From the IMG/VR virus record IMGVR_UViG_3300044796_000662, positions 124,001 to 188,000 of that record: 64,000 nt of DNA; one strand, 5' to 3'. Position numbers and translations under genes: made by a program. Below, in pieces: positions 48,346 to 62,690 of this stretch (position 1 is the first letter of the stretch; every line of letters starts with the position of its first letter). The notes below the pieces were generated by a model, which was not told the DNA's origin, did no database searches, and worked only from the letters and a program-made list of their open reading frames with translations.

Positions 48346-49497
48346 TCAGCGCTGCGGGCGGAACTTGGGGTTGATGCCGCCTGCTGGCCTCGGTTCGAGG
48401 ATGCTTGCGAGGCCCCTCGGGTCCGTGTGCTGTTGTCCACGCTGCGCCAAAACCGGGGTAGGCGCCCTCTCTGCGGGCGATACGAACGTCCCCGGCGGAG
48501 CGTTGGGGGGTGCCACCATCCCGGGCGGAATGACCGCCTGGGGAGGCGCTGCGCGAAGGGCCTCATCGATCATGGCGGCCTCGGCCGGGATGCGGCCAGC
48601 GACTACGGGCGGCCCGGTCATGGCTGGTGGAGCAACCGGAGGCGGACTGACGTACTGCGGCGCAGACGTTGCCGGCTCACGAACCTCAATCGGAGCCTTC
48701 GGCATCTCGGGGATGGGCACCGGCTGTTGGTTCATGGGCACCCGCTGCCTCATGATGTTGGCGACGTTCTGGATGGGGTCCGCCTTCTCGGCGACCGGAC
48801 CACGAGTCGGGGTCGGTGCGGGAGCCTGAACCGGAGGCGGGGCTGCCTGCGGAGCTTCCGCAGCCGGAGCCGGCTGGGGGTCGGAATGCCGCTGGTCGAA
48901 CTCCCGCAACATCTCCGTGTCCTGCGGCGTCGTGTAGAACGTGTACCCGTTCTCGTGCAGGATCGCTTCGAGGATGGGCGGCGGAACCTCCGCTTCCAGT
49001 TCCTTCAGCTCGCCGAGGATGCGGCGGTACTTCTCCTCCGCGCTCTCCTCCGCGACGACGAAGTGCACACCCTCTTTGGCCTTGTTCTCGGCGAGCTGCA
49101 CCGCGTCCGTGAACTTCCGGTACGCCGTGAAGATCGCTTCCTTACTCCACGTCGCCAGGACGTTCTTGCGGAGCCAGTCGTGCACCTCACGCTTGACAGT
49201 GCGCATCTGTGCCCGATTCTTGGGGTCGGGCTCCTCGACCTCTACGAAGTCAGCTTCACGGAGATCGACGCCGTTGATCTCGACGATCGAACGGCAGACG
49301 TGCCCCTCTTGCCACTTGTTGAGGTACGCCAGATCTTCCAGGTCTTTGCATTCCTGGACGACGGCCTCGTATTCGTCGGGACGGAGGTTGCGAAGAACAA
49401 CCTCACAGTCCCCGACCTTGAACTTCTCTTCGACGAGCCCGACAGCCTTTGCTTGCTGAAGAGCCTCGGTGAGGTGCTTTGCGGATACGACTCCCAT
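48346..49497 (-). CDS. Tail assembly chaperone (first), 383 aa with Pro/Ala-rich tail
   Basis: Follows tube gene; EEKFKVGDCEVVLRNL....Y...SIVEINGVDL pattern; AAGGAG RBS. Confidence 0.65.
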   Translation of the reverse strand: MGVVSAKHLTEALQQAKAVGLVEEKFKVGDCEVVLRNLRPDEYEAVVQECKDLEDLAYLNKWQEGHVCRSIVEINGVDLREADFVEVEEPDPKNRAQMRTVKREVHDWLRKNVLATWSKEAIFTAYRKFTDAVQLAENKAKEGVHFVVAEESAEEKYRRILGELKELEAEVPPPILEAILHENGYTFYTTPQDTEMLREFDQRHSDPQPAPAAEAPQAAPPPVQAPAPTPTRGPVAEKADPIQNVANIMRQRVPMNQQPVPIPEMPKAPIEVREPATSAPQYVSPPPVAPPAMTGPPVVAGRIPAEAAMIDEALRAAPPQAVIPPGMVAPPNAPPGTFVSPAERAPTPVLAQRGQQHTDPRGLASILEPRPAGGINPKFRPQR

Positions 49498-49676
49498 CCT
49501 CGATCTCCTTGTCCATTTTGTTTGGACGCGACCTAGAGGATGGCGACGGATAGGCGAGAGCGAATCTACATCTGGATCCGAGTCCCACTACAGGGAGACA
49601 GGAGCCATGTGCATTTGGTCTGATCTGGTCCGATTTACATCTTGGATCGCGTCGCCGTCTCAGGCTGCGTGCCCGA

Positions 49677-50426
49677 TCACACGTTCGGTGGGACCGGAAT
49701 GACCGCCGCGCTGTTGCTTGCGAAGCGGAGCGAGAAGCCCGAACCCGCCTGTCCGTTGGACGAGATGGGAGCGAGGCCCGTGTCGATGAACTCCCCGTAC
49801 TGGGAGAAGCCGTCGATGACGTCAGAGACCTTGACCGAGGAGTTCTCGGCCACCATCGCTGCGTCCGACGTGTAGCTGGCGTTGTACGACTCGAACCAGC
49901 AACCCTCGAAGAAGGTGTACAGCGACTTGACCGCGATGATCGGGGTGGTCGCCGGGTTGAAGATGAACTGCTGCGAGGGCGAGTTGCCGTTGGGGGACGA
50001 CGCGGGCTGCGCGTTCGGTCCAGCGCCGACGTCCTGTTGGACGCTGATCTCGCTGATCACCAGCTCTTGCTTGATGTCGAACGGCCAGCGGTGGTGCTTG
50101 AGCGAGCGGGCGATGCCGTCGATCCCTGCCTTGTAGCCCACCGTCTGGAAGATGTTGGCCGTGTAGAGCAGGGTCTTGTTGAGCGTGAGCGTCATCGGCT
50201 CAGTGACGCCGGGCACCAGCTCGGCGATCTGATCACCGAAGCCGACACCACGCACCGGGTCGATCGTACGAGACTCGTCAGAGCCGAACTCGGAGATCGC
50301 GCCGATCTGCACGAACCCCTGTCCGCCCACGGAGTAACCGTAGACCTTGTTCTTCTGGGAGACGGCTGCGCGCGTGTTCGGCGCAGTCCCCATCCTGTAG
50401 ATGTAGTTCGTGGTCGTGACCGGCAT
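49677..50426 (-). CDS. Tail tube protein
   Basis: IGAISEFGSDESRTIDPVRGVGFGDQIAELVPG...PFDIKQE...FEGCWF.SY matches the myophage tube pattern; upstream of chaperones and TMP. Confidence 0.85.
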   Translation of the reverse strand: MPVTTTNYIYRMGTAPNTRAAVSQKNKVYGYSVGGQGFVQIGAISEFGSDESRTIDPVRGVGFGDQIAELVPGVTEPMTLTLNKTLLYTANIFQTVGYKAGIDGIARSLKHHRWPFDIKQELVISEISVQQDVGAGPNAQPASSPNGNSPSQQFIFNPATTPIIAVKSLYTFFEGCWFESYNASYTSDAAMVAENSSVKVSDVIDGFSQYGEFIDTGLAPISSNGQAGSGFSLRFASNSAAVIPVPPNV

Positions 50427-50447
50427 GACTGCTTACCCCTCGTCCCT

Positions 50448-51413
50448 TCAGACCTTCGCCGAAGCGAAGAGCCCGTGGATGTACTGAGCTTGCTTGGCGA
50501 GAGCCGTCAGGTCCTTGGCGACCCAGGGCTGCGCGAGATCGACGTTGTTGACGATCTCGGTCACGCGCGACGCGATGGCATAGAGGTCTTCCTTCGCCTT
50601 GGACGCGTTGAACTTGCGACCTGCCGTCACGAGGGCATCGACCTTGACGCTCGTCTCCTCGACCGTGTTGATGATCGAGTCGGCGAGGCCGGTGTTCTGC
50701 TTGAGGCTTTCGAGCGAAGGCTGAGCCGCGGGTGCCGCAGCAGCCGGGGCGACCTCAGCGGCCGTCTTCGGGGCGTAGACCGGGGTGGTCGAGGGCTCCG
50801 GAGCGTAGACCGACTTGGTCGAAGGGCTGGCCGTCTCCACCTTCACGCCCTGCGCACTTCCGTGCGTGGCGCTCGCGGGGAGCTTCTGGCCTGCGTCTGC
50901 CGTGTCCACGACAGGCTTCGAGTCGATGTACCACGCGTCGTTCTTGCTCTGGTCACCCGGGTCGTAGAAGTGCAGCCCGCCGACCAGTGAACGAAGCTCA
51001 CTGTGCAGCTTCGGAGCGATCAGTTGTCCTGAGGCGTGCTTGTCGAGCAGGGTAACAACCCCCTCGATCTTCCCGAGCCTCTCCAGGAGCGTCTTTGCGT
51101 CAGCCATGGCTGGTCCTTCCCTCGTCGAGGTTCGATCTGAGCGCGGGATAAGAGAACTAGTGAAGTCCCCAGCGGTACCCCACCTGGATACATGGGGCTT
51201 CAAAAGCTCTCCCATAGCGTCCAGGTCCACCGTAACTACGGCCGAACCGCCTTGGTTGAAGGCGTCGAGCACCTTACGTGCGAACCGCAAGGGGGTCAGC
51301 TCTGTCACGAACTTCAGCATCGAGACTGGGCCCAGCATCATCCGCTGGCCACCCGGCAGGGTCACGAAGTCTCGCAGACCATCCGTTCCGATGGTGACAA
51401 TCGCCTTCCGCAT
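50448..51413 (-). CDS. Hypothetical protein, 321 aa, with probable second in-frame start at 51107 (219 aa)
   Basis: ATG at 51413 preferred over the track's GTG; internal GAGGGAAGGA RBS before ATG GCT GAC (MADAK) at 51107. Confidence 0.65.
   Translation of the reverse strand: MRKAIVTIGTDGLRDFVTLPGGQRMMLGPVSMLKFVTELTPLRFARKVLDAFNQGGSAVVTVDLDAMGELLKPHVSRWGTAGDFTSSLIPRSDRTSTREGPAMADAKTLLERLGKIEGVVTLLDKHASGQLIAPKLHSELRSLVGGLHFYDPGDQSKNDAWYIDSKPVVDTADAGQKLPASATHGSAQGVKVETASPSTKSVYAPEPSTTPVYAPKTAAEVAPAAAAPAAQPSLESLKQNTGLADSIINTVEETSVKVDALVTAGRKFNASKAKEDLYAIASRVTEIVNNVDLAQPWVAKDLTALAKQAQYIHGLFASAKV
51147..51160 (-). promoter_or_regulatory. Candidate phage promoter CTAGTTCTCTTATC inside ORF 50448..51413
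   Basis: Shares CTAGTTCTCTT with 61025..61037; ~40 nt upstream of an internal RBS and ATG. Confidence 0.45.
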
Positions 51414-51434
51414 GTGCGCTCTATCAGAGCGCAC
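51414..51434. other. Perfect 9-bp inverted repeat with 3-nt loop abutting ATG at 51413
   Basis: gtgcgctct-atc-agagcgcac. Confidence 0.8.
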
Positions 51435-51445
51435 GAAAGGAAACG

Positions 51446-51613
51446 TCAGTCTGCGTCTAGCGCTTCGTCATCAAGCCCGAGGTGGTCGAAGTCGGGAGGG
51501 GGCGATGGGATAGTGTCTCTCCGCCCCTCTTCCACCATCTCTTCGAAGTCCTCGAAGTGGTCGAACACGGGGTGGTCTACGCTGAGCAACTCGTCGATGA
51601 CGGGGACTGCCAT
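51446..51613 (-). CDS. Small highly acidic protein, 55 aa (not in ORF track)
   Basis: My translation: MAVPVIDELLSVDHPVFDHFEDFEEMVEEGRRDTIPSPPPDFDHLGLDDEALDAD; AGGA RBS upstream; fills the intergenic gap. Confidence 0.7.
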   Translation of the reverse strand: MAVPVIDELLSVDHPVFDHFEDFEEMVEEGRRDTIPSPPPDFDHLGLDDEALDAD

Positions 51614-51632
51614 GTTCTGCTTCCTGTACCCG

Positions 51633-52487
51633 TCAGACCCTCAAAAAGACTTCCATCAAATGGGGGATGTCGATGAGGGTGCCCGTAGGTGGGGAACGCA
51701 GCCATAGCTCGTCTGCCGTCCATTCCGGGGGTTGACCCAAAGCCGCCTCAATCTGGTTGAGCAGAGAGGCCGCCTGCACGAGATTAAAGGGCACGTACAC
51801 GCTCTTGCGCGATCCCAGCACCTCGCGATGGCCAGCCTTACCCGGGGGTCCCAGGAGCACCCCTCGGAGGTACCCCTGGCGGTACAGGTCAATCCACGTG
51901 AGGTTCAACCTCCCCCGACCCTCAGCTACTACGAATCCATTTGTTCCAGTTTCAAGGATCGTTGCCGTTGGGAGTTGTTGCCCAACATGGGGGAGACGAT
52001 CTTCCGTGACGTGCTCGTAGATCCACCCAACAACCGTCCGTAGCTGCTCGCCTTGCTCCTTCTTGGAAGTCTCCCGGGTGAAGAGGAGCGTGACCATCAC
52101 AAGAAAGTTCACGAGATCTGGGGCCAGGTGCGCGAGGCCCTGAATGCCACGTCGATGTGCCAGGTCCACGGAGGCAAGCAAGCCGGGCGTGGCCGGATGT
52201 GTCACGAGATCACGGTGCAGGAACAACGTGATGGCGTATAGCGTGTCGAAGTTCTCAAGTGTCCGAGTGACGAACTTCTCTGGCAGCGGACGCCCAAGCA
52301 GCACATCCTCGTAGAAGCTCCACAAGGCACCTGGGTCCACGAGTGTGAACTCCGCCCCGTGATGCTCGTACGCATACAGGTGCGGATCAGCCGCTTGCGC
52401 ACGCGTGAGGCCGGTCTCGAACGAGATAGCGTCCTTGACGAGGCCGTTGACCTTGGGGTCAACGAGCACCTGAAGCTGGATCTCCAC
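51633..52487 (-). CDS. Hypothetical protein, possibly divergent DHH/MYG1-like phosphoesterase fold
   Basis: YEHHG in a DHH-like position followed by NFDTLYA; lower GC3; GTG start. Confidence 0.4.
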   Translation of the reverse strand: MEIQLQVLVDPKVNGLVKDAISFETGLTRAQAADPHLYAYEHHGAEFTLVDPGALWSFYEDVLLGRPLPEKFVTRTLENFDTLYAITLFLHRDLVTHPATPGLLASVDLAHRRGIQGLAHLAPDLVNFLVMVTLLFTRETSKKEQGEQLRTVVGWIYEHVTEDRLPHVGQQLPTATILETGTNGFVVAEGRGRLNLTWIDLYRQGYLRGVLLGPPGKAGHREVLGSRKSVYVPFNLVQAASLLNQIEAALGQPPEWTADELWLRSPPTGTLIDIPHLMEVFLRV

Positions 52488-52496
52488 CGAGGGTCG

Positions 52497-52931
52497 TTAC
52501 ACCGGCTCGGCTTCGGGCTCCGGCTTCTTCGCGTGCCAGTCGATGAACCGACCCGCCTCGATGGCGTCCTCGTGCTCGTCGAACAGCTCCATGTACTTCT
52601 CGATGCGGTCCCGCACGCCGTCACGCCAGTTCTGCGTGCGCTTGACCTTGAGGATCATGTCCCTGGGCATGAGCGGCCGGTTCTTCGAGAAGTCGTACAT
52701 GATCATCTGGATGATGTCGGCGCCGCTCTTGCGGGTCTGCGCCCCCTCGGTCGGAACCGTCGTACGGATGCGGATACCGACCTTCGGCGTCAGAAAGAGG
52801 TCGTAGGTCACCTCTCCCATCGAACTGCCCTGCTTGGGGTGGAGCGCGTGGAAGGCGCGCTTGAGGAAGGTATCCCACTCCTCAAGCGAAGCCTCCGTGT
52901 ACGTCGCCCCTGCCATGCCCTCTCGCTTCAT
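52497..52931 (-). CDS. Conserved-looking phage hypothetical protein, 144 aa
   Basis: Start placed at the ATGA overlap with helicase stop (52928-52931) rather than 53150; IRTTV...R..GADII...KVKRTQNW. Confidence 0.7.
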   Translation of the reverse strand: MKREGMAGATYTEASLEEWDTFLKRAFHALHPKQGSSMGEVTYDLFLTPKVGIRIRTTVPTEGAQTRKSGADIIQMIMYDFSKNRPLMPRDMILKVKRTQNWRDGVRDRIEKYMELFDEHEDAIEAGRFIDWHAKKPEPEAEPV

Positions 52932-55900
52932 GACGGCCTCCGGTCGTATGCGGACACCGCTGGGAAGTCCTCCGGGGTCCTCGGGTCGATCGTGTCCGAC
53001 TCGAAGAAGCTGGCGAGCACGGTGGTTGCGTCCGGCGGCTCGGGGGTCGGGTCGTTCTTGCCGGGGACGTTCTGTCCCTTCTTGAGCCCTGCCTCCGAGA
53101 CGAAGACGCTCGGTCCAGCATCTCGCCCGTAAGCGCTCTTGGCCGGGCACACGATGGTCAGGTTTTTCGCTGCGCGGGTCATCGCAACGTAGGCGAGCTG
53201 GCGCTCTGTCTTGAACTCCTCGGCCCGCTCCTTGGCCAGGCGCTCTTGCGCCTCGGGCGGGAGAAGCTCCTCACCCGGCTTCGGCCTCGGCTCGTACGGG
53301 AAGACACCCCTGGCCATGACCACAGAGGTGTTGTTCCACTGCGCGCCCTTGACCGAGTGCACGGTGGAGAGGGTCACGCAGGGCGGCGCCTTGCGCTCGT
53401 TCGGGGGGAGCTTCTGCTGCTCCGCATCCCACTGGTCGAGATCGATGCGCAGATCCTTCGAGGCGGCCACGAGCTTGTCGATGCGCGCCTTGAACTTCTT
53501 GGGATCGCTCGGGTCCGTGTCCAGGTTCGCTGGATCCGGCTGCGCGATCTGGAAGAGGAAGACCACGTTGCCGATCGGCTTCTTCGACGGGTCATCATCC
53601 GGATCGGGCGGCGAGTCGCTCTCTTCCTCGTGTCCCCCAAATACGGGCATGAGCACGTCGCGCAGGGTCGGAGCAGGAGCATCCCTGCGTTCGGGCACAC
53701 CCTTGACGTTGAGGATGTCGCCGAAGAGGTCTTGTGTCGTGTAAGGCTTGTTCTCGCCGGTCAGCCTGTCGTAGATCTTGCCGACCTCTACGGACTCCCG
53801 CATCCCACGAAGAGCGCGGCCGAGGTTCTCCAGCTCCTCACCCGTAGCCCGAACCTTCCAGTTCTCCCAGCGGCGGGCCGGGTCCATCGCGTCCATGAAC
53901 GCGTTGATACCGGGACGGTCGAAGAGATCGAGCGGGTTGACGTTCTTCGAAGAGGTGCCGAGCTGGCGCGCCCTCTTTTCGACGACCTCGTTAACGATGC
54001 GCTCCGACTCCCCCGCCTTGAGGTAGAACCTGTTCGGCTTGTTCAAGACCTCGATGAGCGACTTCTGCATGCGCTCGAAATCCTGACCCGCTGCCAGGTT
54101 GAAGTAGCTCATCACGGTCACGGTCTCGGGGGACCGGAGGAAGCTCGTGCCGCCCTTGCGTGCGTACGGGATGCCCTGGATGATGCAGGCCGTCTCGAAG
54201 TCGTTCTGCTCCATGTTGGTACGGGTCAGAACGGCGTAGTCTTCCAGCGGAGCGCCGGCGTCCACGTCCTGCTTGATCTGCGAGACGACGCTCAGAGCGC
54301 CCGCTGCATGGGTCGGCGGCTCTTGAACGACGATCGAAGACTGCCCCCGCGGCTTGGACGCATCCGGCACCGCCTCCATGGGGACGCCACGGGGGTGGTT
54401 GGTCATGAGCTGGTTGGCGTGATCGACGATCTCGGGCAAGCAGCGATAGTTCGTGCGGATGGTCTTGGTCTTCCACCCGGGCTTGCCGTGGAACTGCGTG
54501 AGCAGCTCCGGACGAGCGCCCACGAAGCGGTTGACGCTCTGCACTTCGTCGCCCACGAGCCATACGGACTTGCCGTCCGAACCGTCGCCAATGTGCTCGG
54601 ACATCATGGCGATGATCTGGTGCTGCACCGTGTTGAGGTCTTGGGCCTCATCGACCAGGATGTGATCGAACATGGCCTGAACGCGCTTGCGCACGATGGG
54701 GTCTCGCTTGAGCACGTCGCGGAACATGATGATCATGTCCGAGAAGTCGCCAAGACGAGCCTTGCCGTTATCGCGCCACTTCGCGAGGAACTCTCCCCAC
54801 TGCTTCATCGCCTTGGGGCTGGTGTCCTTGCAGGGCGGGCTCCAGGTCTTGTCGATGCCCTTGAAGCCGTTGAGCCAGGCGTACCACTCGGCCTGGTCCT
54901 TCTCTTCTTCCGTTCCGGCCATCGCCTTCGCTTGCGCGGGAGTGATGTCGTTCATCATCCAGGACTGGACGACATTCTTCGCCCGCCCCGGCGGATCCTG
55001 GTCCCGGCATTCCTTCCAGATGCGGGCCATGTACCCGCCGAAGGCTCCCGGGGAAGGTGCCCGGCCTGAACGCTGGTCCTGGTCGCCCGCCTTCTTCGAG
55101 GGCGTAGTCATGAGCCACGTGGTGAGCGCGGCCTTCTCCTCAGGCGTGCCGTTCTCGACGACGAACTTGCGGAACATGCCGTGCATCGTCCCGACGTTCA
55201 TCTGCTTGAGCGCGTCGTCGCCGACCTGCGCTCCGATGCGCTCCCGAAGCTCGCGGGCGGCCTTGCGGTTGAAGCTCACGACGAAGATACGAGCCGGGTT
55301 GACCTTGCGGTCCTTGACCAGGTAAGCCGCACGAGCCGTGACCGTGGTGGTCTTGCCCGAACCGGCGCCGGCCATGATGACGACGCGGCCGTCTGTCAGA
55401 GCGGCATCGAGCTGCTCGGGGTCCAGGCGGGCCAGAGACTCGGGGACGGCCCCGGCCTTCGAGGCGGCTGCGGCCGCTGTGGCGATGCCGATGACCTCGG
55501 ACTTGGTAGGCGGAGCGTCCGCCTCCCCGCTCACATCAAGAGCCCGCTTGGCAGCCTCCTGAGCGTCCTTCTGGATGACTGTCAATCGGTCTGCATGGTC
55601 CTTGGTCGCAACGTGTGCCTCTTCACTGAGGACGGGGCCTGCCACCCTCTTGGCGTTGTCGAGGGTCAAGGCATGGGTGTCGTCGAGCGTGGCCGTTGCA
55701 GCGGCATCCACGGCGTTCTGAACATCGCCAGCGCCCGCGACCTTCGCCGCGAGGTCAATCCATGCGCGCACCCGCGCGTTGCGGATCGAGACCGTGGCGA
55801 TTTGACCCATCGCCGAAGCGCCATCGTCGTACGTGGACGCCTGCATGACCAAGTTCACCTCGCGACGTGCGCGGGCGGACTCGAAGACCTTGCGGATGGT

Positions 55901-56278
55901 GGCCGTACCCCCAAGAGAGAGCACGTTGCGGAGCTGGAGGGCCTGACGAGGCAGGCCAGCGCGGCTCGTGGCAAACCGGAACGCCTTGGCCAGCATCTTC
56001 TTGCGCGTCTCGTTGGGCATGTGCCCGGTCAGAAACGCATGGTACGCGTCGCCGTGCTGCGAGTTGGCCTGCTGAAGAAGCCTCAGGCCCCGCTTGAGAA
56101 CGGGGTCCATGGGGTCGTGAAGACCCGTCTTCTCCTTCAGGAACCGGAAGTACGTGTCATAGGCGAAGACGAAGACCACCCATTCGGCGACTTCGAGATC
56201 TCCCACATCCTCGACCGGATCAGAGTGCCCGGTCGGAACTGGCTCAGCGGCGGTGCGACGGTCGTAGCTCATCACCAT
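52928..56278 (-). CDS. uvrD: UvrD/Rep/PcrA-family SF1A DNA helicase with ~285-aa N-terminal extension
   Basis: LDPEQ (Q), AGAGSGKT (I), SFNRKAA (Ia), LVDEAQD (II), VGDEVQS (III), NYR (IV), TVHSVKG (V), ERQLAYVAMTRA (VI). Confidence 0.95.
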   Translation of the reverse strand: MVMSYDRRTAAEPVPTGHSDPVEDVGDLEVAEWVVFVFAYDTYFRFLKEKTGLHDPMDPVLKRGLRLLQQANSQHGDAYHAFLTGHMPNETRKKMLAKAFRFATSRAGLPRQALQLRNVLSLGGTATIRKVFESARARREVNLVMQASTYDDGASAMGQIATVSIRNARVRAWIDLAAKVAGAGDVQNAVDAAATATLDDTHALTLDNAKRVAGPVLSEEAHVATKDHADRLTVIQKDAQEAAKRALDVSGEADAPPTKSEVIGIATAAAAASKAGAVPESLARLDPEQLDAALTDGRVVIMAGAGSGKTTTVTARAAYLVKDRKVNPARIFVVSFNRKAARELRERIGAQVGDDALKQMNVGTMHGMFRKFVVENGTPEEKAALTTWLMTTPSKKAGDQDQRSGRAPSPGAFGGYMARIWKECRDQDPPGRAKNVVQSWMMNDITPAQAKAMAGTEEEKDQAEWYAWLNGFKGIDKTWSPPCKDTSPKAMKQWGEFLAKWRDNGKARLGDFSDMIIMFRDVLKRDPIVRKRVQAMFDHILVDEAQDLNTVQHQIIAMMSEHIGDGSDGKSVWLVGDEVQSVNRFVGARPELLTQFHGKPGWKTKTIRTNYRCLPEIVDHANQLMTNHPRGVPMEAVPDASKPRGQSSIVVQEPPTHAAGALSVVSQIKQDVDAGAPLEDYAVLTRTNMEQNDFETACIIQGIPYARKGGTSFLRSPETVTVMSYFNLAAGQDFERMQKSLIEVLNKPNRFYLKAGESERIVNEVVEKRARQLGTSSKNVNPLDLFDRPGINAFMDAMDPARRWENWKVRATGEELENLGRALRGMRESVEVGKIYDRLTGENKPYTTQDLFGDILNVKGVPERRDAPAPTLRDVLMPVFGGHEEESDSPPDPDDDPSKKPIGNVVFLFQIAQPDPANLDTDPSDPKKFKARIDKLVAASKDLRIDLDQWDAEQQKLPPNERKAPPCVTLSTVHSVKGAQWNNTSVVMARGVFPYEPRPKPGEELLPPEAQERLAKERAEEFKTERQLAYVAMTRAAKNLTIVCPAKSAYGRDAGPSVFVSEAGLKKGQNVPGKNDPTPEPPDATTVLASFFESDTIDPRTPEDFPAVSAYDRRPS

Positions 56279-56310
56279 CTCTACCCTTACACCCGTCGTT
56301 CAATAGATGG

Positions 56311-56351
56311 AAGCAAACAGCCCCGGAGTCCGACGAGGGACTTCGGGGCTG
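56311..56351 (-). terminator. Rho-independent terminator-like hairpin after sheath gene
   Basis: 14-bp stem CAGCCCCGAAGTCC / GGACTCCGGGGCTG (one mismatch) followed by TTTGCTT on the minus strand. Confidence 0.65.
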
Positions 56352-56372
56352 CCGGCTGGGGTTTCCCTAGCC

Positions 56373-59300
56373 TCAGAGGCTCGCGCGGAGGTTGAACGTC
56401 AGCACGAGGTAGAGGAGGGGGAAGATCGGCTGGTAGTAGGCCGAGAAGTCGAGCGTCGTGGGGTCGTTCGGATCGACCACTGCGCTCACGCCCGTGTACG
56501 CGCCGATGATCTGCGCCTCGATGAGGCCCTTGAGAAGGGCGGTCATCGAAACCGTGACCTCGTTGGTACGCGAGAGCAGGTACTTCGTGCCGACGAACGA
56601 GTCCAGGATGACTCGGCTCTGCTGCTGCACGAAGTCGCTGATCTGCGTCACCGTGGGGAGACGCGTCAGGATCGTGCTCATGTTCGTCGTCAGAGCAGCG
56701 CGGATGCGGATGAGCGGTTGCAGCTCTTCGAGCACCGTGATGCCTGCGACGGCGGTCTGGTTGGCCGTGACAGGGTCGAGCACCCGGGGGATGCTCGTGA
56801 AGCCCTGGAGGCGGCGACGGTCGTAGGGGGTCGCGACGTCCACCGCAGGCGAGCACCCCGCGCCGGCAACTGCCGCCGCGTAGAAGGTACCGTCCACGAT
56901 CGAGTCGTAGCTTGCGCCCGTCTCGTCCGTCAGGGTGATGTCGGAGCTGTCGGGGTAGAACGCGACGATGCGGTTTGAGAGCAAGCTCCGAACGACCGTC
57001 TGAGCGTTCGTCGGCGACGTGCCCGAAGCGAACCCGATGAAGCCCATCCGCTCCGACTGGTTGCGGATGTTGGATTCCACTTCACAGTGCTGCGTCAGGT
57101 AGGCGTAGACTGCCGTGCTGGTCGCGAGCGGGACGAGGATGTCCGGCTTCACGTTGCCAGGCAGCGGGGTCGCGAGGTTCTGGATGGCCGTGATGAAGCT
57201 CGCGTCCGACGCCTGGTTCGTGTTCGGCACCGCGAGCACCTGGCTGATACCCACGAGCACCGCGCCGTTGAGGATGGCGAGGTACGCCGCGAGGCTGACC
57301 CGGTTTTGCGGGGCCACGACGCCGAAGTTGGCGTTGATGGTCGCTTGCTGCTGGAAGAGCCGGACCGTGAAGTCCTGCTTCATGTACTGGTAGGACACGA
57401 AGTAGAAGTCGCCGACTGCCGGAGCGGTGCCGCTCGGGTTGAAGGTCGTGATCGTGCCCGTGTCGTTCGTTCCGACGCCCACGGTGTTGGAGACGGTGGT
57501 CTCCAGACCCGGGATGGCGTAGGTCGGAATGGCCGAGGTCACGTTGAACGTCTGCGAGACGAGCAGCGTGAAGCTTCCGGATCCCCCGTAGCTGCCGATG
57601 GCGGACGGCAGCACCGTGAAGCGCAGGCCCGTCTTCGCATCGACGTACGTCTGACCAGGGTAGCCAGTTCCGCTCGAACCCGAGGAGTTCGAAGACGTGA
57701 CCACGAAGTTGTCGATCGGGTTCTCGCCGTCATCCCCATCCGTGCCCGGCACGAGACCGATGTTGGTGCTCGTGTTGAACGCGGAGTTCGAGGAGGTGAC
57801 GAAGCCGATGCTCGAACCTGCCGCGCCGACCGTCAACGACTCGAACGTGATGTAGTTCAGGCTGTTGATCTGATCGACGTAGGCAATGGCCGCCGACTTG
57901 AAGCCGGAGGTCGCCATGAGTTCGTCCACGATCTCGTAGGCGAAGACCTGGACCTGGCTTGCCGAGGCGTTCTGCGTGAAGCCGAGTGGCGTGTTCGCCG
58001 TTCCCGTGCCGATGATGATCGACGAGTTGGCGTTGTTGGTCGGGCTCGTGAGGCGGAGCTTGCCCGAGTTTGCGAGAGTACCAACCGAGGCGACACCAGA
58101 GAGACCCGGGGTCGTGTTGATCGCGGTCACGATGGCCGACGTAGCGACCGACGTCCCGTTGGGGATGGTGATCGTGTACTGGTTGCCGTTGACCGAGATG
58201 ATGAGCTGGTCGTTGACCCCCAACGTGATGTTGTAGGGGCCTGCGATGCTGCTCAGGAGGGTTGCCGGCTTGTTGATCGCGCCGGTCGTGCCCTTACCCG
58301 TCGAGAAGGTCTGGAACCCGAGGGTCGAGGTGACAGTACCCTGGTTGATCTCGACTGCCGAGGGGCTGTCGAAACCGCCAGGCAGCGCGCCCGGAACCGA
58401 GTAGCTGTAGATGTAGAACAGTACGTCGCCCGTGCTCGGCCCGATCTGGGAGAAGTTGGCGAGGTTGTTCGGTGCCGTTCCGGAGAACGCAGCGTTGAGG
58501 TCGATGACCTCGTTGATCGAGGCCACGATGGCTGCCGGGCTGTAGTAGCCCCCAGCCGCCGAGCCGAAGACCGCCGTGGTCGAGGGGTTGGTCGTACCCG
58601 TGTAAGCCGTCGTGAGCGTGATGTTGCCGCTCGTGACCGCCTGGACCACGTAGTACGTGCCCGCCTGCGAAGCGAACGTGATGACGTTGCCCGGGAAGAC
58701 GAGCCCGACTTGCGAGGTCGAAGTCGTGACCGTGGCGCTTGCCGTCACATCGAAGGTACCCGTGAGGGCTCCCGTGGGCAGCGTGACCGAGAGGGCCGTG
58801 CCGTCGATGGTCAGGTTGAGGACGTTGTTCGGAGCGGCCGGGATCTGGATGAACCCAGAGTCGCCACCCGACTGGACCGGCGTGACGTGCCCGCCGACCA
58901 CGACACCGCGCTCTGCGGCAGCGAGGTTGGTCGTCACGTTGCTGCCGTTGACTTCCGTGACCCACGTCGCCGAGGACGGCGTGAAGATCGAGTACGGCTC
59001 AGCGTTGCGGTTCGTGAAGCTCGCGTTGTTGGCGGCCGCCGTACCGAACGTCACCGTCACGGTCTCGGGGACCGGCGTTCCGGCGCCCGTCATGAAGGCG
59101 TCGGGGATGCTCTGAACGCCACGCGGCCAGATGACCTGTTGGCTGAGACCAGACGTCGTGCCGAACCGGATCTGCCAGGCGTTCTGGTTCTGGTTCGAGT
59201 CGAGGATCTGGTACGTACCCGCCCCGTACGCCCCAGGGGTCGTGCAGGTCAGGATGAACGTGTCATCCGTAATCCGGTTGTACCAGAAGGTGGCCCAAGC

Positions 59301-60872
59301 CTGGAAGTCGGGCGGGACCGGGTTGGCCAGCGTGACGAGACGCTGAAGTCCGTCCACCGCCGTCACCGTGACCGGGCCACGGTTGACTGCATCACGGAAC
59401 GAGCGACCCACGTAGACCTGAACGAGGTCCGGGCGGTTCGTCACGAGGTCTTGGCGCGCGTTCGTGACCGAGTTGAAGAGCGGCAGGCCAAGGGGCGTGT
59501 CGCGGCCGTTGCCGGTCGTCGGGATTTCCGGCAGCGTGAACTGGTTGGTCGAAACCGTCGCCGGGATCGTCGTGGTGTTCACAACGCGCGTGCACGGGGC
59601 CAGCCAGAGCTTGTCGTCCACGAGAAGGGCGCTGACGAGCGTGTTGTCGAACGGCTGCGCACCAGTCGAGGTCGAACCTGCTGCGATGACGAAGCTCGTC
59701 CCCCAGAGGATGACCGAGACCGACTTCGAAGGGTTGGAGACGATGAAGTCCACACCCTGCACGTAGTCGTTGCGGCCTGGCGAGATGCCGCACGCGACCA
59801 CGTTGGTCACGAGGGAGTTCGGCAGGTAGTCGAACGTGTTCTGCCAGGTGTTGGCCGAGTATTGAACCGTGACCGTGGTCCCCGCTGCCGGAGCGTAGGG
59901 GAGCGTCACGACACCGTTCGTACCGTCGAGGCTCGTCGGGATGACCTGGACGTTGTTGACGAGAACGACCACCTTCGAGGTGTCCGTCGTCGTCACGCCG
60001 CCGCCCGTGCCGTCCGTGACCGGGATGTTGAAGACCCGGAACGCCTGGTTGCGGACCGTCTTCGCACCGGCCGAGAAGCCGAGGATGCCGTTGGCCGTGC
60101 CCGAACCGATGATGAGGTTCTGGGTCGTCGTGAACTGCACGTGGTTCAGACCCGCGTTGTCGGTGAAGACCGACGCCACGAGGTTGGTCACCGCGGCTGC
60201 GTTGATCGCAGAAGCGAAACCCGCCGCCGTGTAGCTCTGTGCCCCGAGCGAGATCGTCGAGGTGACGCCGTTGACCGAGACAGCGAACTGGTCGCTCTGG
60301 CCACCGACCACCACGTACGGCTCGAACGCCGGCGCAACGAGGGTTGCGAGGCTGTTGCTCACCTGGGCCGAGACGTCGTCCTTGAAGGACGTGTCGCCAC
60401 GGTGGAAGTAGTAGGTGACGTTGACCTGGTCGGTCGGCTGCGTCGGCACCTGGAGGGTGATGAGACCCTGCGAACCGTTGACCGCTGCGAGAGCAACCGG
60501 CGTCCCGTTGACCGTAACGGTCACAGCGCTCGTGTTGTTCGAGACCGTCCCGGTCCCTTGACCGTTGGTGATCGGGAAGTTCGCCACCTTGAAGGTGACA
60601 AGGGTTCCCGTCTGGAGGCCGAGGATGAGGTTCTGGGGGTTCGTCGCGTTGACGACCCACTCCTCAGTGACGTCCTCGTTGACGATCTGTTCGTCGGCCG
60701 AGCCGGACGAACCGCGCACGATCTCGACGTTGTCGTTCTCCAGCACTTGCTGGCCGACCCCGATAATGACAGGGATCCTTAGACCCGCCGTCAGGTTCGA
60801 GACGTTGGCTTCAGTCAGCGTCCGCGTGTAAACGCCGGGCGGGACGTAGGAAATGAACGGGCCGAGTGCCAT
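56373..60872 (-). CDS. Contractile tail sheath protein, 1499 aa, with many inserted surface domains
   Basis: N-terminal YVPPGVYT, C-terminal ERMGFIG...YAAAVAG...AGITVLE...YYQPIFPLLYLVLTF; GAGGAG RBS. Confidence 0.95.
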   Translation of the reverse strand: MALGPFISYVPPGVYTRTLTEANVSNLTAGLRIPVIIGVGQQVLENDNVEIVRGSSGSADEQIVNEDVTEEWVVNATNPQNLILGLQTGTLVTFKVANFPITNGQGTGTVSNNTSAVTVTVNGTPVALAAVNGSQGLITLQVPTQPTDQVNVTYYFHRGDTSFKDDVSAQVSNSLATLVAPAFEPYVVVGGQSDQFAVSVNGVTSTISLGAQSYTAAGFASAINAAAVTNLVASVFTDNAGLNHVQFTTTQNLIIGSGTANGILGFSAGAKTVRNQAFRVFNIPVTDGTGGGVTTTDTSKVVVLVNNVQVIPTSLDGTNGVVTLPYAPAAGTTVTVQYSANTWQNTFDYLPNSLVTNVVACGISPGRNDYVQGVDFIVSNPSKSVSVILWGTSFVIAAGSTSTGAQPFDNTLVSALLVDDKLWLAPCTRVVNTTTIPATVSTNQFTLPEIPTTGNGRDTPLGLPLFNSVTNARQDLVTNRPDLVQVYVGRSFRDAVNRGPVTVTAVDGLQRLVTLANPVPPDFQAWATFWYNRITDDTFILTCTTPGAYGAGTYQILDSNQNQNAWQIRFGTTSGLSQQVIWPRGVQSIPDAFMTGAGTPVPETVTVTFGTAAANNASFTNRNAEPYSIFTPSSATWVTEVNGSNVTTNLAAAERGVVVGGHVTPVQSGGDSGFIQIPAAPNNVLNLTIDGTALSVTLPTGALTGTFDVTASATVTTSTSQVGLVFPGNVITFASQAGTYYVVQAVTSGNITLTTAYTGTTNPSTTAVFGSAAGGYYSPAAIVASINEVIDLNAAFSGTAPNNLANFSQIGPSTGDVLFYIYSYSVPGALPGGFDSPSAVEINQGTVTSTLGFQTFSTGKGTTGAINKPATLLSSIAGPYNITLGVNDQLIISVNGNQYTITIPNGTSVATSAIVTAINTTPGLSGVASVGTLANSGKLRLTSPTNNANSSIIIGTGTANTPLGFTQNASASQVQVFAYEIVDELMATSGFKSAAIAYVDQINSLNYITFESLTVGAAGSSIGFVTSSNSAFNTSTNIGLVPGTDGDDGENPIDNFVVTSSNSSGSSGTGYPGQTYVDAKTGLRFTVLPSAIGSYGGSGSFTLLVSQTFNVTSAIPTYAIPGLETTVSNTVGVGTNDTGTITTFNPSGTAPAVGDFYFVSYQYMKQDFTVRLFQQQATINANFGVVAPQNRVSLAAYLAILNGAVLVGISQVLAVPNTNQASDASFITAIQNLATPLPGNVKPDILVPLATSTAVYAYLTQHCEVESNIRNQSERMGFIGFASGTSPTNAQTVVRSLLSNRIVAFYPDSSDITLTDETGASYDSIVDGTFYAAAVAGAGCSPAVDVATPYDRRRLQGFTSIPRVLDPVTANQTAVAGITVLEELQPLIRIRAALTTNMSTILTRLPTVTQISDFVQQQSRVILDSFVGTKYLLSRTNEVTVSMTALLKGLIEAQIIGAYTGVSAVVDPNDPTTLDFSAYYQPIFPLLYLVLTFNLRASL

Positions 60873-61024
60873 CCGAGTGTCTCCTCAGCAGAGTGGAGAG
60901 AGGTGCTGCGTTCTCATCCGCATCTGGGTGCGATCTGCCGGAAATCGACAGTGCTTTCGCTTATCTGATTCGGATTCGGATCTCGCCCGTAGGTCGGCGC
61001 TGACGTTCTACGCTGGATAGAGTT

Positions 61025-61037
61025 ACAAGAGAACTAG
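61025..61037 (-). promoter_or_regulatory. Candidate phage promoter CTAGTTCTCTTGT upstream of sheath
   Basis: AT-rich motif at the start of the 161-nt sheath leader; near-identical to 51147..51160. Confidence 0.45.
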
Positions 61038-61480
61038 CGATGCTCGCCGCCGGGTCCCCTCTGTGCCCTGACCGAGTCGATGGCGACCTTGGCGAGATTG
61101 CGCCTCGCTGTACGTCCGCCGTCGCTCATAGGCTCATAATCAATGTAATCGCGGTTGTTGTGGCGGATCAGGGCATGGGTTCCACCCTGTTTACGGGCTT
61201 CGGCCTTGACCTTCTCCCGTTCGTGGATCTCCGCCCAGCGGACTTCCGCATCCCGCCCGACAAGCTTGTCCGCCGTAGGATAGTCGTTGTCGTGGACGCC
61301 CGTGTTCGCCGTAGCGCCCGTCTGGGAGCCCTTGAAGGCGAAAGCCAGTGAGTCCGCGTCCCACACTCGCGGTGCATCGCGCCCGCACGAGGGGCACTCG
61401 TGCGTCAGGTGCTCTGCCATCTTGAGGGTGCGGAGGAACTCGACGTTGCAGTCCTCGCACGCGAACGTGTACATGGGCAT
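61034..61480 (-). CDS. FmdB-family zinc-ribbon protein
   Basis: MPMYTFACEDC...ECPSCG matches MPxYxyxCxxC...CPxCG. Confidence 0.85.
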   Translation of the reverse strand: MPMYTFACEDCNVEFLRTLKMAEHLTHECPSCGRDAPRVWDADSLAFAFKGSQTGATANTGVHDNDYPTADKLVGRDAEVRWAEIHEREKVKAEARKQGGTHALIRHNNRDYIDYEPMSDGGRTARRNLAKVAIDSVRAQRGPGGEHR

Positions 61481-61496
61481 GGGATCCTCATTTGGG

Positions 61497-62690
61497 TCAG
61501 CGGATGCGCTCGAAGTCGTTGTTGCGCCCGTTGAAGATGGGCAAGGAGGGGTAGATCAGGGGGCTTGCGCCGCTGGCGAGGGGGGCGACCTGGTCTGACG
61601 GCGTATTGGGGTCGGCCGGCTGACCGGCTGCGTTTGTCTGCCTGACACGACTGATCGTGAAGGGCATCGGCGCGTGCACTTCCCAGTCCGCGCGCAACTG
61701 GAGCGACAACGAGGCCGAGTACATGTAGATGTCGCCCGTCTCATCCATGGGCTCTTCGCTCTCACCGCCCATGGAGAGGTCCACGATCTCGATGCCCTCG
61801 TTCTCCAGGTACGGCTTCTTGTCCGCCCAGAGGTACATCATCGCGAGGTCGGAGATCTCTTCCATCTGGATCGGGTCTTGAGCCACGGCTTCCAGTTCGA
61901 AGCTGACCTCCCACTTGCCACCGTACGCCCGCGCCACATCCACACGGTCCGGGTAGACCACGACCGCGCACTTGTCCCCAACGCGGGCACGCTTGCCGAA
62001 CGCCATGACCACACCGGGCAGTGTCTTGAAGTCCGAGACGTTCCAAAAGAACGGGATCGGACCAAGGGACGGGACCGAGTAGCGGTACTCCGCCATGACC
62101 CTCGCCCCGGGCTTGAAGCGGGTCTTGAAGACAATCGCTCCGGTCGAGTAGTTGACAACGTAGTCAGTACCCTCCGTGAGCAGCCAGTTGCCGTTCTCGT
62201 AGATCCGGAGCGTGCCCTTCGAAGGAGGGTTCTGAAGCTGACCCTCAGTCTCGATGCCGGTCTGAAAGAAGAGCAGAGGTTCTTGGGGGACCGTGATGAG
62301 GGGGTCAATCGTGTACATGCCAGGCTCGGAGGCGTTCTTGGGCACGGACAAGATCTCGATGTAGTAGACCCCAGGCAGGATCGGCATCTGCTCTTGGTTG
62401 TTCGCGAGGACAGCCTGATCCTCGCGAACCCACTCGATAGGATGCGCGGGCGTACCAAAGTAGAAGAGACCCACGTGGCTCTCGACCGTCCCCATGAAGT
62501 TGTCGCCAGCTAGGGAGATCTTGTTGGCACTCGATCCCTTGACGATGATCCCGTACTGCGGACGCTCGTTGAAGCTGTACTTGTTCTGGATGTACGGAAC
62601 GATCTTGCTGTAGATGGGGTGGCGCGAGAACGAGTCTTTCAACTCGTTGATGATGCGCCGCTTGAGAGCCCCAATGATGTAGTAGTACAC
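61497..62690 (-). CDS. Tail terminator / completion protein (gp15/gpU-like) with inserted Ig-like module
   Basis: Position upstream of sheath; WEVSFELEAVAQD...EEISDLAMMYL...YSASLSLQL beta-alpha-beta pattern. Confidence 0.55.
   Translation of the reverse strand: MYYYIIGALKRRIINELKDSFSRHPIYSKIVPYIQNKYSFNERPQYGIIVKGSSANKISLAGDNFMGTVESHVGLFYFGTPAHPIEWVREDQAVLANNQEQMPILPGVYYIEILSVPKNASEPGMYTIDPLITVPQEPLLFFQTGIETEGQLQNPPSKGTLRIYENGNWLLTEGTDYVVNYSTGAIVFKTRFKPGARVMAEYRYSVPSLGPIPFFWNVSDFKTLPGVVMAFGKRARVGDKCAVVVYPDRVDVARAYGGKWEVSFELEAVAQDPIQMEEISDLAMMYLWADKKPYLENEGIEIVDLSMGGESEEPMDETGDIYMYSASLSLQLRADWEVHAPMPFTISRVRQTNAAGQPADPNTPSDQVAPLASGASPLIYPSLPIFNGRNNDFERIR

What the first reader, a model, noticed from the sequence alone, without database searches (positions are those of the whole stretch)
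50448..56351. Sheath and tube genes split by a 5.9-kb helicase cassette and a terminator
Seen: five co-oriented non-structural-looking ORFs (helicase, 144 aa, 284 aa, 55 aa acidic, 321 aa) lie between sheath (56373) and tube (50426), with a terminator-like hairpin right after the sheath. Established: sheath and tube are usually adjacent in myophage, R-pyocin and eCIS loci. Inference: either a DNA-metabolism cassette was inserted, or these proteins are late-expressed, virion-packaged and ejected to act on incoming phage DNA.
Basis: partly seen in the sequence, partly recalled or inferred. Interest (0 to 1): 0.6.

Follow-up and report, generated by a model that had tools for sequence, protein, structure and literature searches.

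The report
Helicase genes nested between sheath and tube
In this uncultivated giant phage and most of its relatives, a DNA helicase and a few partner genes sit between the tail sheath and tail tube genes as an old, conserved arrangement with their own control signals, and nothing indicates that their products travel in the virus particle.

Summary
On the minus strand lie a 1499-aa sheath, a terminator-like hairpin, five ORFs (UvrD/PcrA-type helicase 1116 aa, then 144, 284, 55 and 321 aa) and a 249-aa tube.

It is neither an assembly chimera nor a recent insertion. Of 70 non-redundant relatives, 54 carry the helicase in this slot, 64 the 284-aa gene and 68 the 321-aa gene.

The slot is modular:
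- Helicase+p144 move as a pair; in one relative they lie about 54 kb away.
- p284 has a DHH/DHHA1 (RecJ/NrnA-like) fold and is inverted in 11 relatives.
- p321 stays directly upstream of the tube.

The hairpin belongs to the sheath gene. It is kept by position, not sequence, across the clade and in phages Tunturi_5 and G.

A GGTGTA box lies 9-13 nt before the start codons of the helicase and p284. It also precedes more than 14 other genes of this phage; all that have a family assignment act on DNA, nucleotides or are ATPases, and none is structural. It precedes p284 in 49 of 55 relatives and the tube in 0 of 69.

Best reading: separately regulated DNA-metabolism genes nested in the tail operon. 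Virion packaging has no support, and expression timing is untested.

The parts
56373..60872 (-). Tail sheath gene (1499 aa). The N- and C-terminal parts are conserved; the middle carries a large insertion.
   Evidence: tblastn to phage G gp178 (cryo-EM sheath, PMC8570332) and to the Tunturi_5 annotated sheath. No Pfam or NCBIfam hit.
56311..56352 (-). Intrinsic-terminator-like hairpin (stem 56317-56352) followed by a T-rich tail (TTTGCTT).
   Evidence: A strong hairpin after the sheath stop is kept by position in relatives while its sequence changes. The best 40-nt window has a median of -25.2 kcal/mol, against about -13 after other genes and at random places.
56285..56293 (-). GGTGTAAGG box, 6 nt before the helicase ATG.
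   Evidence: The same box lies before DNA-metabolism genes of this phage and before the helicase in 20 of 45 relatives.
52928..56278 (-). SF1A UvrD/PcrA/Rep-type helicase (1116 aa) with a family-less N-terminal extension (residues 1-285).
   Evidence: Pfam UvrD-helicase 4e-45 and UvrD_C 4e-24; phrog_1967 4e-80; PDB PcrA 6.5e-36; NCBIfam pcrA, rep and uvrD below the equivalog cut-offs. Walker A (AGSGKT), DEAQD and the YVAMTRA motif are visible.
52497..52931 (-). p144, of unknown fold. Its start is coupled to the helicase stop (ATGA overlap), and it travels with the helicase.
   Evidence: No family, PDB or Atlas match.
52498..52503 (-). GGTGTA box, 10 nt before the p284 GTG start. It overlaps the p144 stop codon.
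   Evidence: GGTGTA lies within 70 nt upstream of p284 in 49 of 55 non-redundant relatives, whatever the orientation of the gene.
51633..52487 (-). p284, a two-domain DHH/DHHA1-fold protein (like RecJ, Cdc45, NrnA, GdpP). Canonical catalytic motifs are not evident.
   Evidence: AF2 pLDDT 95.4. All Foldseek top hits are in the DHH superfamily. VIA Z 10.7 for the full length; Z 9.6 at rmsd 2.4-2.8 for residues 172-284 against the DHHA1 domains of archaeal RecJ/GAN. Atlas clusters carry DHH/DHHA1.
51446..51613 (-). p55, a small acidic ORF (pI 4.05).
   Evidence: A homologue was found only in the two nearest relatives.
50448..51413 (-). p321: a small N-terminal alpha/beta domain, an Ala/Pro-rich disordered linker and a C-terminal three-helix bundle. 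It lies directly upstream of the tube in nearly all relatives.
   Evidence: It has its own upstream box, TCCTTTCGT. No family was found.
49677..50426 (-). Tail tube gene (249 aa), 21 nt after the p321 stop.
   Evidence: No GGTGTA box upstream in 0 of 69 relatives.

Best explanation
The sheath-tube interval is a long-standing variable slot in a large clade of uncultivated huge phages from peat, soil and freshwater. These phages are distantly related to Tunturiibacter phage Tunturi_5 and Bacillus phage G.

In this phage the slot holds three units:
1. An intact UvrD/PcrA-type SF1A helicase with a translationally coupled 144-aa partner.
2. A DHH/DHHA1-fold (RecJ/NrnA-like) protein plus a 55-aa acidic ORF.
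3. A 321-aa protein that stays with the tube gene.

The sheath gene ends in an intrinsic-terminator-like hairpin that is a property of the sheath gene itself. Units 1 and 2 each begin with a GGTGTA box 9-13 nt before the start codon. The same box precedes this phage's SNF2 helicase, NAD-ligase, Dam methylase, nucleotidase, ClpX-like and AAA ATPases and a second DHH phosphoesterase.

Inferred: the box is a class-specific expression signal. Most likely it is a promoter giving very short or leaderless mRNAs; alternatively it is a translational operator. On that reading the helicase and the DHH protein are made together with the DNA-metabolism genes and act inside the infected cell, in replication restart, recombination or end processing, or in nucleotide turnover. 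They are not made as tail or virion parts. p321 and the tube form the structural unit of the slot.
For: Shown:
- Helicase family and intact motifs.
- DHH/DHHA1 fold of p284.
- Conserved gene order in 70 relatives, with modular variants.
- Helicase+p144 found together about 54 kb from the tube in the L046 contig.
- Inteins in the helicase of several relatives; inteins typically sit in conserved catalytic proteins such as replication enzymes (established knowledge).
- Post-sheath hairpin conserved by position with sequence turnover; also present in Tunturi_5, in phage G and in relatives that lack the helicase.
- GGTGTARGG occurs 9 times in the 126-kb contig. All copies are on the coding strand, 6-10 nt before an ATG.
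- In the 363-kb record of the same phage there are 18 coding-strand copies against 3 on the other strand (controls 2 and 3). Sixteen of the 21 sit directly before ORFs.
- The genes so marked that have a family assignment act on DNA, nucleotides or are ATPases; several are unassigned and none is structural.
- The most enriched upstream 7-mers are all parts of this box.
- The box precedes p284 in 49 of 55 relatives and the helicase in 20 of 45. It precedes the tube in 0 of 69, p434 in 0 of 40 and p321 in 2 of 51.
- Three sites in the contig show the arrangement hairpin, T-tract, then box.
Against: - There are no expression data. The one RNA-library run holds the region only as long, flat-depth contigs, which cannot be told apart from DNA carry-over.
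- The nature of the GGTGTA box (promoter or translational signal) is inferred, not shown. The scan for sigma-70-type promoters finds nothing here.
- The tube gene has no visible signal of its own and sits 21 nt after p321. Some transcription must therefore run through part of the slot, and cassette genes could also be transcribed late.
- p284 has no detectable Pfam DHH match and no clear DHH or GGGH motifs. Enzymatic activity is uncertain.
- p144, p55 and p321 have no assignable function.
Confidence: 0.6

Rival explanations
1. One reading: the helicase and its neighbours are late proteins that are packaged in the virion and ejected with the DNA, to act on incoming phage DNA or on host defences. 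P1 Dar proteins and N4 vRNAP are precedents.
For: The genes lie inside the tail gene block and share its orientation with tight spacing. Large enzymes are packaged by some phages (established knowledge). Tunturi_5 has a gene annotated 'DNA ejection protein' in the equivalent slot.
Against: - The Tunturi_5 slot genes are unrelated to any cassette protein by hhalign.
- The helicase and p284 carry the box of the DNA-metabolism gene set, not that of structural genes.
- Helicase+p144 sit far from the tail genes in one relative.
- The phage G homologue gp299 also lies far from the tail genes.
- No virion data exist for any clade member (no cultured phage has p284 or p321).
Confidence: 0.05
2. Recent insertion of a mobile DNA-metabolism cassette, or an assembly chimera that joins unrelated contigs.
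For: Mobile elements do visit this slot. There are inteins in the helicase and an HNH endonuclease ORF between p321 and the tube in some relatives. The helicase+p144 pair changes location.
Against: - No composition break.
- The same order occurs in 38 relatives colinearly and in 11 more with p284 inverted, down to 60% tube identity.
- A single 107-kb DNA contig at even depth spans the region, and an independent run holds near-identical fragments.
- No flanking repeats or integrase were seen.
Confidence: 0.02
3. Part of the block is really tail morphogenesis. p321, and perhaps p55, would be a tube or tail assembly factor or a minor structural protein, so that only helicase+p144 and p284 are foreign to the tail module.
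For: - p321 is directly upstream of the tube in 68 of 70 relatives, with a gap of about 20 nt.
- It has its own upstream box, different from GGTGTA.
- Its build (small domain, long flexible linker, helical bundle) would suit a chaperone or scaffold.
- Phage G has a second tube-like gene at that position.
Against: - No similarity to phage G gp179, to the tube family or to any known tail protein.
- The TCCTTTCGT box was not seen before other structural genes of the contig.
Confidence: 0.3
4. Counter-defence module. The DHH-fold protein would destroy host signalling nucleotides (as GdpP/NrnA-type enzymes do with c-di-AMP, pApA and SAM-AMP). The helicase, p144 and the acidic p55 would neutralise host nucleases.
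For: The closest full-length structural neighbours of p284 are small NrnA, GdpP, PggH, NrN and pAp-phosphatase enzymes that act on nucleotides rather than long DNA. p55 is small and very acidic.
Against: - The catalytic DHH and GGGH motifs are not recognisable.
- The helicase has all the motifs of an ordinary PcrA/UvrD enzyme and carries inteins in relatives, as conserved replication enzymes typically do.
Confidence: 0.1

Closest known systems
PcrA/UvrD/Rep helicases of phages (SPO1-like Bacillus phages, phage G gp299; phrog_1967)
   Same: The SF1A core domains 1A/1B/2A/2B and all signature motifs. About 28-30% identity over the core.
   Different: It has a 285-aa N-terminal extension without a family and an obligate 144-aa downstream partner. 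It is placed between the sheath and tube genes, whereas in phage G and the SPO1-like phages the helicase lies among other genes.
DHH/DHHA1 phosphoesterases (NrnA, GdpP, pAp phosphatase, archaeal RecJ/GAN, Cdc45)
   Same: The two-domain fold. The C-terminal domain superposes on DHHA1 at rmsd 2.4-2.8 A over about 100 residues.
   Different: No Pfam DHH or DHHA1 hit and no clear DHH or GGGH motifs. The conserved residues are D10, Y40-E-H-H-G, D61, H120 and R227-K228. It may be a divergent enzyme or a non-catalytic, Cdc45-like cofactor.
Sheath-tube region of Bacillus phage G (gp178-gp179-gp180) and Tunturiibacter phage Tunturi_5 (gp326-gp329)
   Same: Homologous sheath and tube genes. A hairpin follows the sheath gene. 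One or two genes separate sheath and tube.
   Different: The intervening genes are unrelated: a tube-like gp179 in G, and gp327/gp328 in Tunturi_5. Neither phage has a helicase or a DHH-fold gene in the slot.
Class-specific phage expression signals. Named from memory, not tested here: T4 middle/late promoters, and the T4 RegA operator on replication-gene mRNAs.
   Same: A short conserved box at a fixed place before the start codons of a functionally coherent gene set.
   Different: The sequence (CC)GGTGTA(A/G)GGG matches no consensus known to me. Its distance to the ATG (9-13 nt here, up to about 35 nt in relatives) and the frequent lack of a Shine-Dalgarno sequence suggest very short leaders. 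Its mechanism has not been shown.

Membership tests
SF1A UvrD/PcrA/Rep helicase | UvrD-helicase N-terminal and UvrD_C domains above the Pfam cut-offs | tested here: met
   155 bits (cut-off 23) and 86 bits (cut-off 25.6). PDB PcrA E 6.5e-36.
SF1A UvrD/PcrA/Rep helicase | Walker A, DEAQD (motif II) and motif VI are intact | tested here: met
   AGSGKT, VDEAQD and YVAMTRA are visible in the translation.
SF1A UvrD/PcrA/Rep helicase | Orthology to PcrA, UvrD or Rep (NCBIfam equivalog cut-offs) | tested here: not met
   187 bits against a cut-off of 911 for pcrA. It is a member of the superfamily but not an equivalog.
SF1A UvrD/PcrA/Rep helicase | ATP-dependent 3'-5' DNA unwinding | not testable with these tools
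   Needs biochemistry.
DHH/DHHA1 phosphoesterase superfamily | Two-domain DHH + DHHA1 fold | tested here: met
   pLDDT 95 model. All top Foldseek, VIA and Atlas matches are DHH-family proteins.
DHH/DHHA1 phosphoesterase superfamily | Sequence motifs DxD, D, DHH and D, plus GGGH in DHHA1 (metal and phosphate binding) | tested here: inconclusive
   No Pfam hit. The conserved acidic and His residues are not in the canonical order. No residue-level structural superposition was available.
Myophage tail sheath | Homology to an experimentally defined sheath protein | tested here: met
   The C-terminal 340 aa match phage G gp178, E 3e-22. gp178 is the cryo-EM sheath.
Myophage tail sheath | Match to Pfam or NCBIfam sheath models | tested here: not met
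   No hit. Only a weak phrog_19400 hit.
Tail tube protein | Fold or feature similarity to known tube families, and the expected position before the chaperone/tape-measure genes in a relative | tested here: met
   Atlas: Phi812_tail_tube, Phage_tube_2, DUF2001. Homologue of phage G gp180.
Tail tube protein | Direct match to Pfam tube models or to solved tube structures by sequence | tested here: not met
Intrinsic (rho-independent) terminator | G+C-rich stem-loop followed by a U-tract, placed after a stop codon | tested here: met
   The tail has 5 T in 7 bases. The position is conserved in relatives.
Intrinsic (rho-independent) terminator | Transcripts end there | not testable with these tools
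   Only contigs of the RNA-library run were available.
Virion-packaged ejected proteins | Presence in purified particles | not testable with these tools
   No cultured phage carries p284 or p321.
Virion-packaged ejected proteins | Co-regulation with structural genes | tested here: inconclusive
   The upstream box is shared with DNA-metabolism genes and is absent before structural genes. No expression data.

The most novel reading that the evidence does not exclude
The GGTGTA box is a previously undescribed, clade-wide promoter class that gives leaderless or near-leaderless mRNAs and is read by a phage-directed polymerase or sigma factor. It would define the DNA-metabolism regulon of these huge phages. 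The sheath-tube slot would then be a terminator-insulated island of that regulon inside the late tail operon. On this reading the helicase, p144 and the DHH-fold protein form a dedicated helicase-cofactor machine: an SF1 helicase with a RecJ/Cdc45-like partner.
Probability: 0.2. Interest if true: 0.55.

Novelty: new variant of a known kind. Interest (0 to 1): 0.33.

Why it matters
Taken alone this is a gene-order peculiarity. Phage genomes are mosaic, and jumbo phages often scatter their structural genes.

The useful results are these:
- The split is a stable, clade-defining synteny marker for a large group of uncultivated huge phages.
- The work exposes a short upstream box that sorts the clade's DNA-metabolism genes from its structural genes. 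That gives a handle for annotating many ORFans and for predicting expression classes in genomes with no cultured member.
- It defines three protein families without annotation: p144, a helicase partner; p284, a divergent DHH fold; and p321, a neighbour of the tube gene.

Tried and rejected
- blastn of the region against cultured phages: no match.
- Profiles of the p144, p284, p321 and tube families against PDB sequences: nothing significant.
- Pfam, PHROGs and NCBIfam on p144, p284, p55 and p321, singly and for every alignment member: only scattered chance hits.
- hhalign of the three families against the slot genes of Tunturi_5, phage G, L080 and LR745208, and of p284 against the phage's second DHH phosphoesterase: no relation.
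- p321 model against BFVD and against all PDB representatives: only generic three-helix-bundle matches. The N-terminal domain was effectively not tested.
- ESM Atlas search for p144: nothing usable.
- Word search of 5.8 billion proteins with p321: 80 relatives, all unnamed and without Pfam domains.
- Complex prediction for tube + p321: verdict 'no answer' (score 0.00). This is not evidence either way.
- Rfam scan of 49000-61500: no known RNA family.
- A conserved hairpin directly upstream of p321 was considered because this phage and L003 have one. It was rejected because folding energies across relatives are no lower than for control genes.
- TCCTTTCGT as a general late promoter was rejected for this contig. 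It occurs once in an intergenic position.
- The RNA-library run could not be used for expression, because only long flat-depth contigs were available.
- Literature search for this arrangement: nothing relevant. The 'moraphage' lineage is unrelated.
Full report
**Context.** The window is part of a single 126,452-bp virus record with 62.5% G+C and nearly all genes on the minus strand. An IMG/VR record of 362,937 bp is 100% identical over the region (L001). A contig of 569,965 bp encodes an identical p321. This is therefore a huge phage known only from metagenomes: peat, and near-identical fragments in a soil run. The nearest cultured relatives are remote. Tunturiibacter phage Tunturi_5 (309-kb myovirus, PMC11924767) has 45% tube identity and Bacillus phage G has 25%.

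**Observation.**
- The 1499-aa protein has no Pfam or NCBIfam hit. Its C-terminal 340 residues match gp178 of phage G, which cryo-EM shows to be the sheath. It also matches the Tunturi_5 sheath.
- The 249-aa protein matches phage G gp180, one of two HHpred tube candidates that lie before the chaperone and tape-measure genes. In the ESM Atlas it resembles Phi812_tail_tube, Phage_tube_2 and DUF2001 clusters.
- The spacer after the sheath stop folds into a 14-pair hairpin followed by TTTGCTT.
- A 107-kb DNA contig at even depth spans the block, and an independent run holds near-identical pieces. With the synteny below, this rules out an assembly chimera.

**What the genes are.**
- *Helicase.* It is an SF1A UvrD/PcrA/Rep-type enzyme with all motifs intact and an extra 285-aa N-terminal region.
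- *p144.* Its ATG overlaps the helicase stop. It has no detectable family.
- *p284.* It gave a very confident model (pLDDT 95.4). Its neighbours in PDB and in the Atlas are all DHH/DHHA1 proteins: pAp phosphatase, NrnA, GdpP, PggH, NrN, archaeal RecJ/GAN and Cdc45. Z reaches 10.7, and the DHHA1 domain aligns at rmsd 2.4-2.8 A. The classical DHH and GGGH motifs are not recognisable in the family alignment, so catalysis is uncertain.
- *p55.* It is acidic and confined to the closest relatives.
- *p321.* It has a small N-terminal domain, an Ala/Pro-rich disordered middle and a three-helix bundle. No informative match was found.

**Synteny.** The tube protein retrieved 192 related stretches in IMG/VR. 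The best 80 loci were fetched with 10-kb flanks. Among 70 non-redundant relatives (tube identity 51-94%), the counts are as follows:

| Arrangement or gene | Relatives |
|---|---|
| Colinear order helicase-p144-p284-p321-tube | 38 |
| p284 inverted, upstream of the helicase | 11 |
| No helicase in the slot, but p284-p321-tube kept | 14 |
| Helicase in the slot | 54 of 70 |
| p284 in the slot | 64 of 70 |
| p321 in the slot | 68 of 70 |

- In the L046 contig, whose slot lacks the helicase, a helicase+p144 pair sits about 54 kb away. That pair therefore moves as a unit.
- More distant relatives (L080, LR745208, Tunturi_5, phage G) have one or two unrelated genes between sheath and tube.
- In this lineage the interval has always been occupied and is a variable slot. 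It also collects selfish elements: one to three inteins in the helicase and an HNH endonuclease ORF just before the tube.

**The hairpin.** The test looked within 100 nt after the sheath stop and took the most stable 40-nt window.
- After the sheath, the median is -25.2 kcal/mol in 49 non-redundant relatives, and 61% are at or below -20.
- After the helicase, p284, p321, p383 and p434, and at random places, the median is about -12 to -14, and 0-6% are at or below -20.
- The stems differ completely in sequence and are often followed by T-tracts.
- The hairpin is also present where p284 rather than the helicase follows, and in Tunturi_5 and phage G.

It is a feature of the sheath gene (a terminator or 3' stabiliser), not of the cassette.

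**A class-specific upstream box.** An unbiased k-mer count of upstream regions in the contig is led by pieces of CCGGTGTA(A/G)GGG.
- GGTGTARGG occurs nine times. All copies are on the coding strand, 6-10 nt before an ATG.
- Of the 18 coding-strand copies of the looser GGTGTA, ten lie within 26 nt upstream of gene starts, nine of them at 9-13 nt. These include the helicase and p284.
- In the 363-kb record there are 18 coding-strand copies against 3 on the other strand (reversed-pattern controls 2 and 3). Sixteen of the 21 directly precede ORFs.
- The marked genes with a family assignment are an SNF2 helicase, an AAA ATPase, a ClpX-like ATPase, an NT5C nucleotidase, DUF1848, DUF1653, a second DHH phosphoesterase, a calcineurin-like phosphoesterase, a Dam-type methylase, another DNA methylase and an NAD-dependent ligase. 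Several small ORFs are unassigned, and none is structural.
- Across relatives, GGTGTA lies within 70 nt upstream of p284 in 49 of 55 and of the helicase in 20 of 45.
- For comparison it does so for p321 in 2 of 51, p383 in 3 of 64, the tube in 0 of 69, p434 in 0 of 40 and the sheath in 0 of 5.
- In relatives its distance to the start codon varies from 9 to about 35 nt, and a separate Shine-Dalgarno sequence is present or absent. It is therefore not simply a ribosome-binding site.
- Three sites in the contig read hairpin, T-tract, then box. This is the layout of a terminator followed by a promoter.

I infer a promoter for short-leader or leaderless mRNAs. A translational operator is the alternative. 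Neither has been shown.

**p321 and the tube.** p321 has a different upstream box, TCCTTTCGT, in about half of the relatives. It occurs once in an intergenic position in this contig. The tube follows p321 after about 20 nt with no box of its own. The slot thus resolves into three units whose limits match the rearrangements seen in relatives: helicase+p144, p284(+p55), and p321+tube.

**Interpretation.** Its 'inserted cassette' is better described as old, conserved and modular. Its virion-packaging idea has no support and runs against the regulatory signature, although timing and virion content remain unmeasured.

The most likely function is intracellular DNA transactions. A PcrA/UvrD-type helicase with a dedicated small partner would act in replication restart, recombination or end processing. 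A RecJ/NrnA-like protein would act either as a nuclease or phosphoesterase, or as a non-catalytic helicase cofactor.

How the tube reaches structural-protein levels from behind this block is unexplained. The possibilities are read-through of the sheath hairpin, the p321 box, or the GGTGTA units.

**Verdict.** This is a real but fairly ordinary feature: a lineage-specific synteny variant. The useful by-products are a clade-wide regulatory box, a conserved post-sheath terminator and three unannotated protein families.

Noticed in passing
G006 (363-kb record of the same phage), loci L089-L109; window 56285-56293 and 52498-52503: The GGTGTA(A/G)GG box marks at least 16 genes. Those with a family assignment act on DNA, nucleotides or are ATPases (NAD-ligase, Dam methylase, SNF2 helicase, nucleotidase, ClpX-like, metallophosphoesterase and others). 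It could serve to predict an expression class across the clade.
   Followed up: partly
L013:3279-7535, L026:2677-8226, L075:146-7447: The helicase of several relatives carries one to three inteins (Intein_splicing and Hint domains), which swell it to 1418-2433 aa.
   Followed up: partly
L023:9373-10008 (similar C-terminal CxxCN motifs in L025, L040, L055, L058, L069, L077): An HNH-endonuclease-like ORF (DH...N...CxxCN) is inserted between p321 and the tube gene. The slot attracts homing elements.
   Followed up: partly
window 56373-60872: At 1499 aa the sheath protein is about 2.5 times the length of phage G's. Only the N-terminal ~630-690 and C-terminal ~550-575 residues align to the most distant clade members (L080, LR745208), and only ~160 and ~430 to Tunturi_5. 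The middle looks like repeated inserted domains.
   Followed up: no
window 60873-61033 and 49498-49676: The long spacers before the sheath and before p383 are rich in CAGATC/GGATC-like repeats. Similar repeats precede the sheath, and in some relatives the tube. This may be a signal for structural genes.
   Followed up: no
window 51414-51445: A TCCTTTCGT box lies about 20 nt before p321. TTTCGT occurs upstream of p321 in 24 of 52 relatives, but the box is found only once in an intergenic position in this contig. In this phage a perfect 8-bp hairpin lies between the box and the ATG; that hairpin is not conserved in relatives.
   Followed up: partly
G000:C1:659-1666 (outside the window): A second DHH phosphoesterase (335 aa, phrog_4771) is also preceded by the GGTGTA box. 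It is not detectably related to p284 by hhalign.
   Followed up: partly
whole record: The record is 126 kb, IMG/VR holds an identical 363-kb version classed as 'provirus', and a 570-kb contig encodes an identical p321. The true genome is much larger than the record. The provirus label was not checked.
   Followed up: no
window 52543-52806 (+): An 87-aa ORF antisense to p144 has very high GC3 (0.93). It is probably a shadow of the conserved p144 frame and not a gene.
   Followed up: no
window 51001-57000: A library labelled as metatranscriptomic holds the whole region as 11.6-kb and 15.6-kb contigs at flat depth of about 29. This suggests DNA carry-over or pervasive transcription, and it cannot settle expression.
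   Followed up: partly
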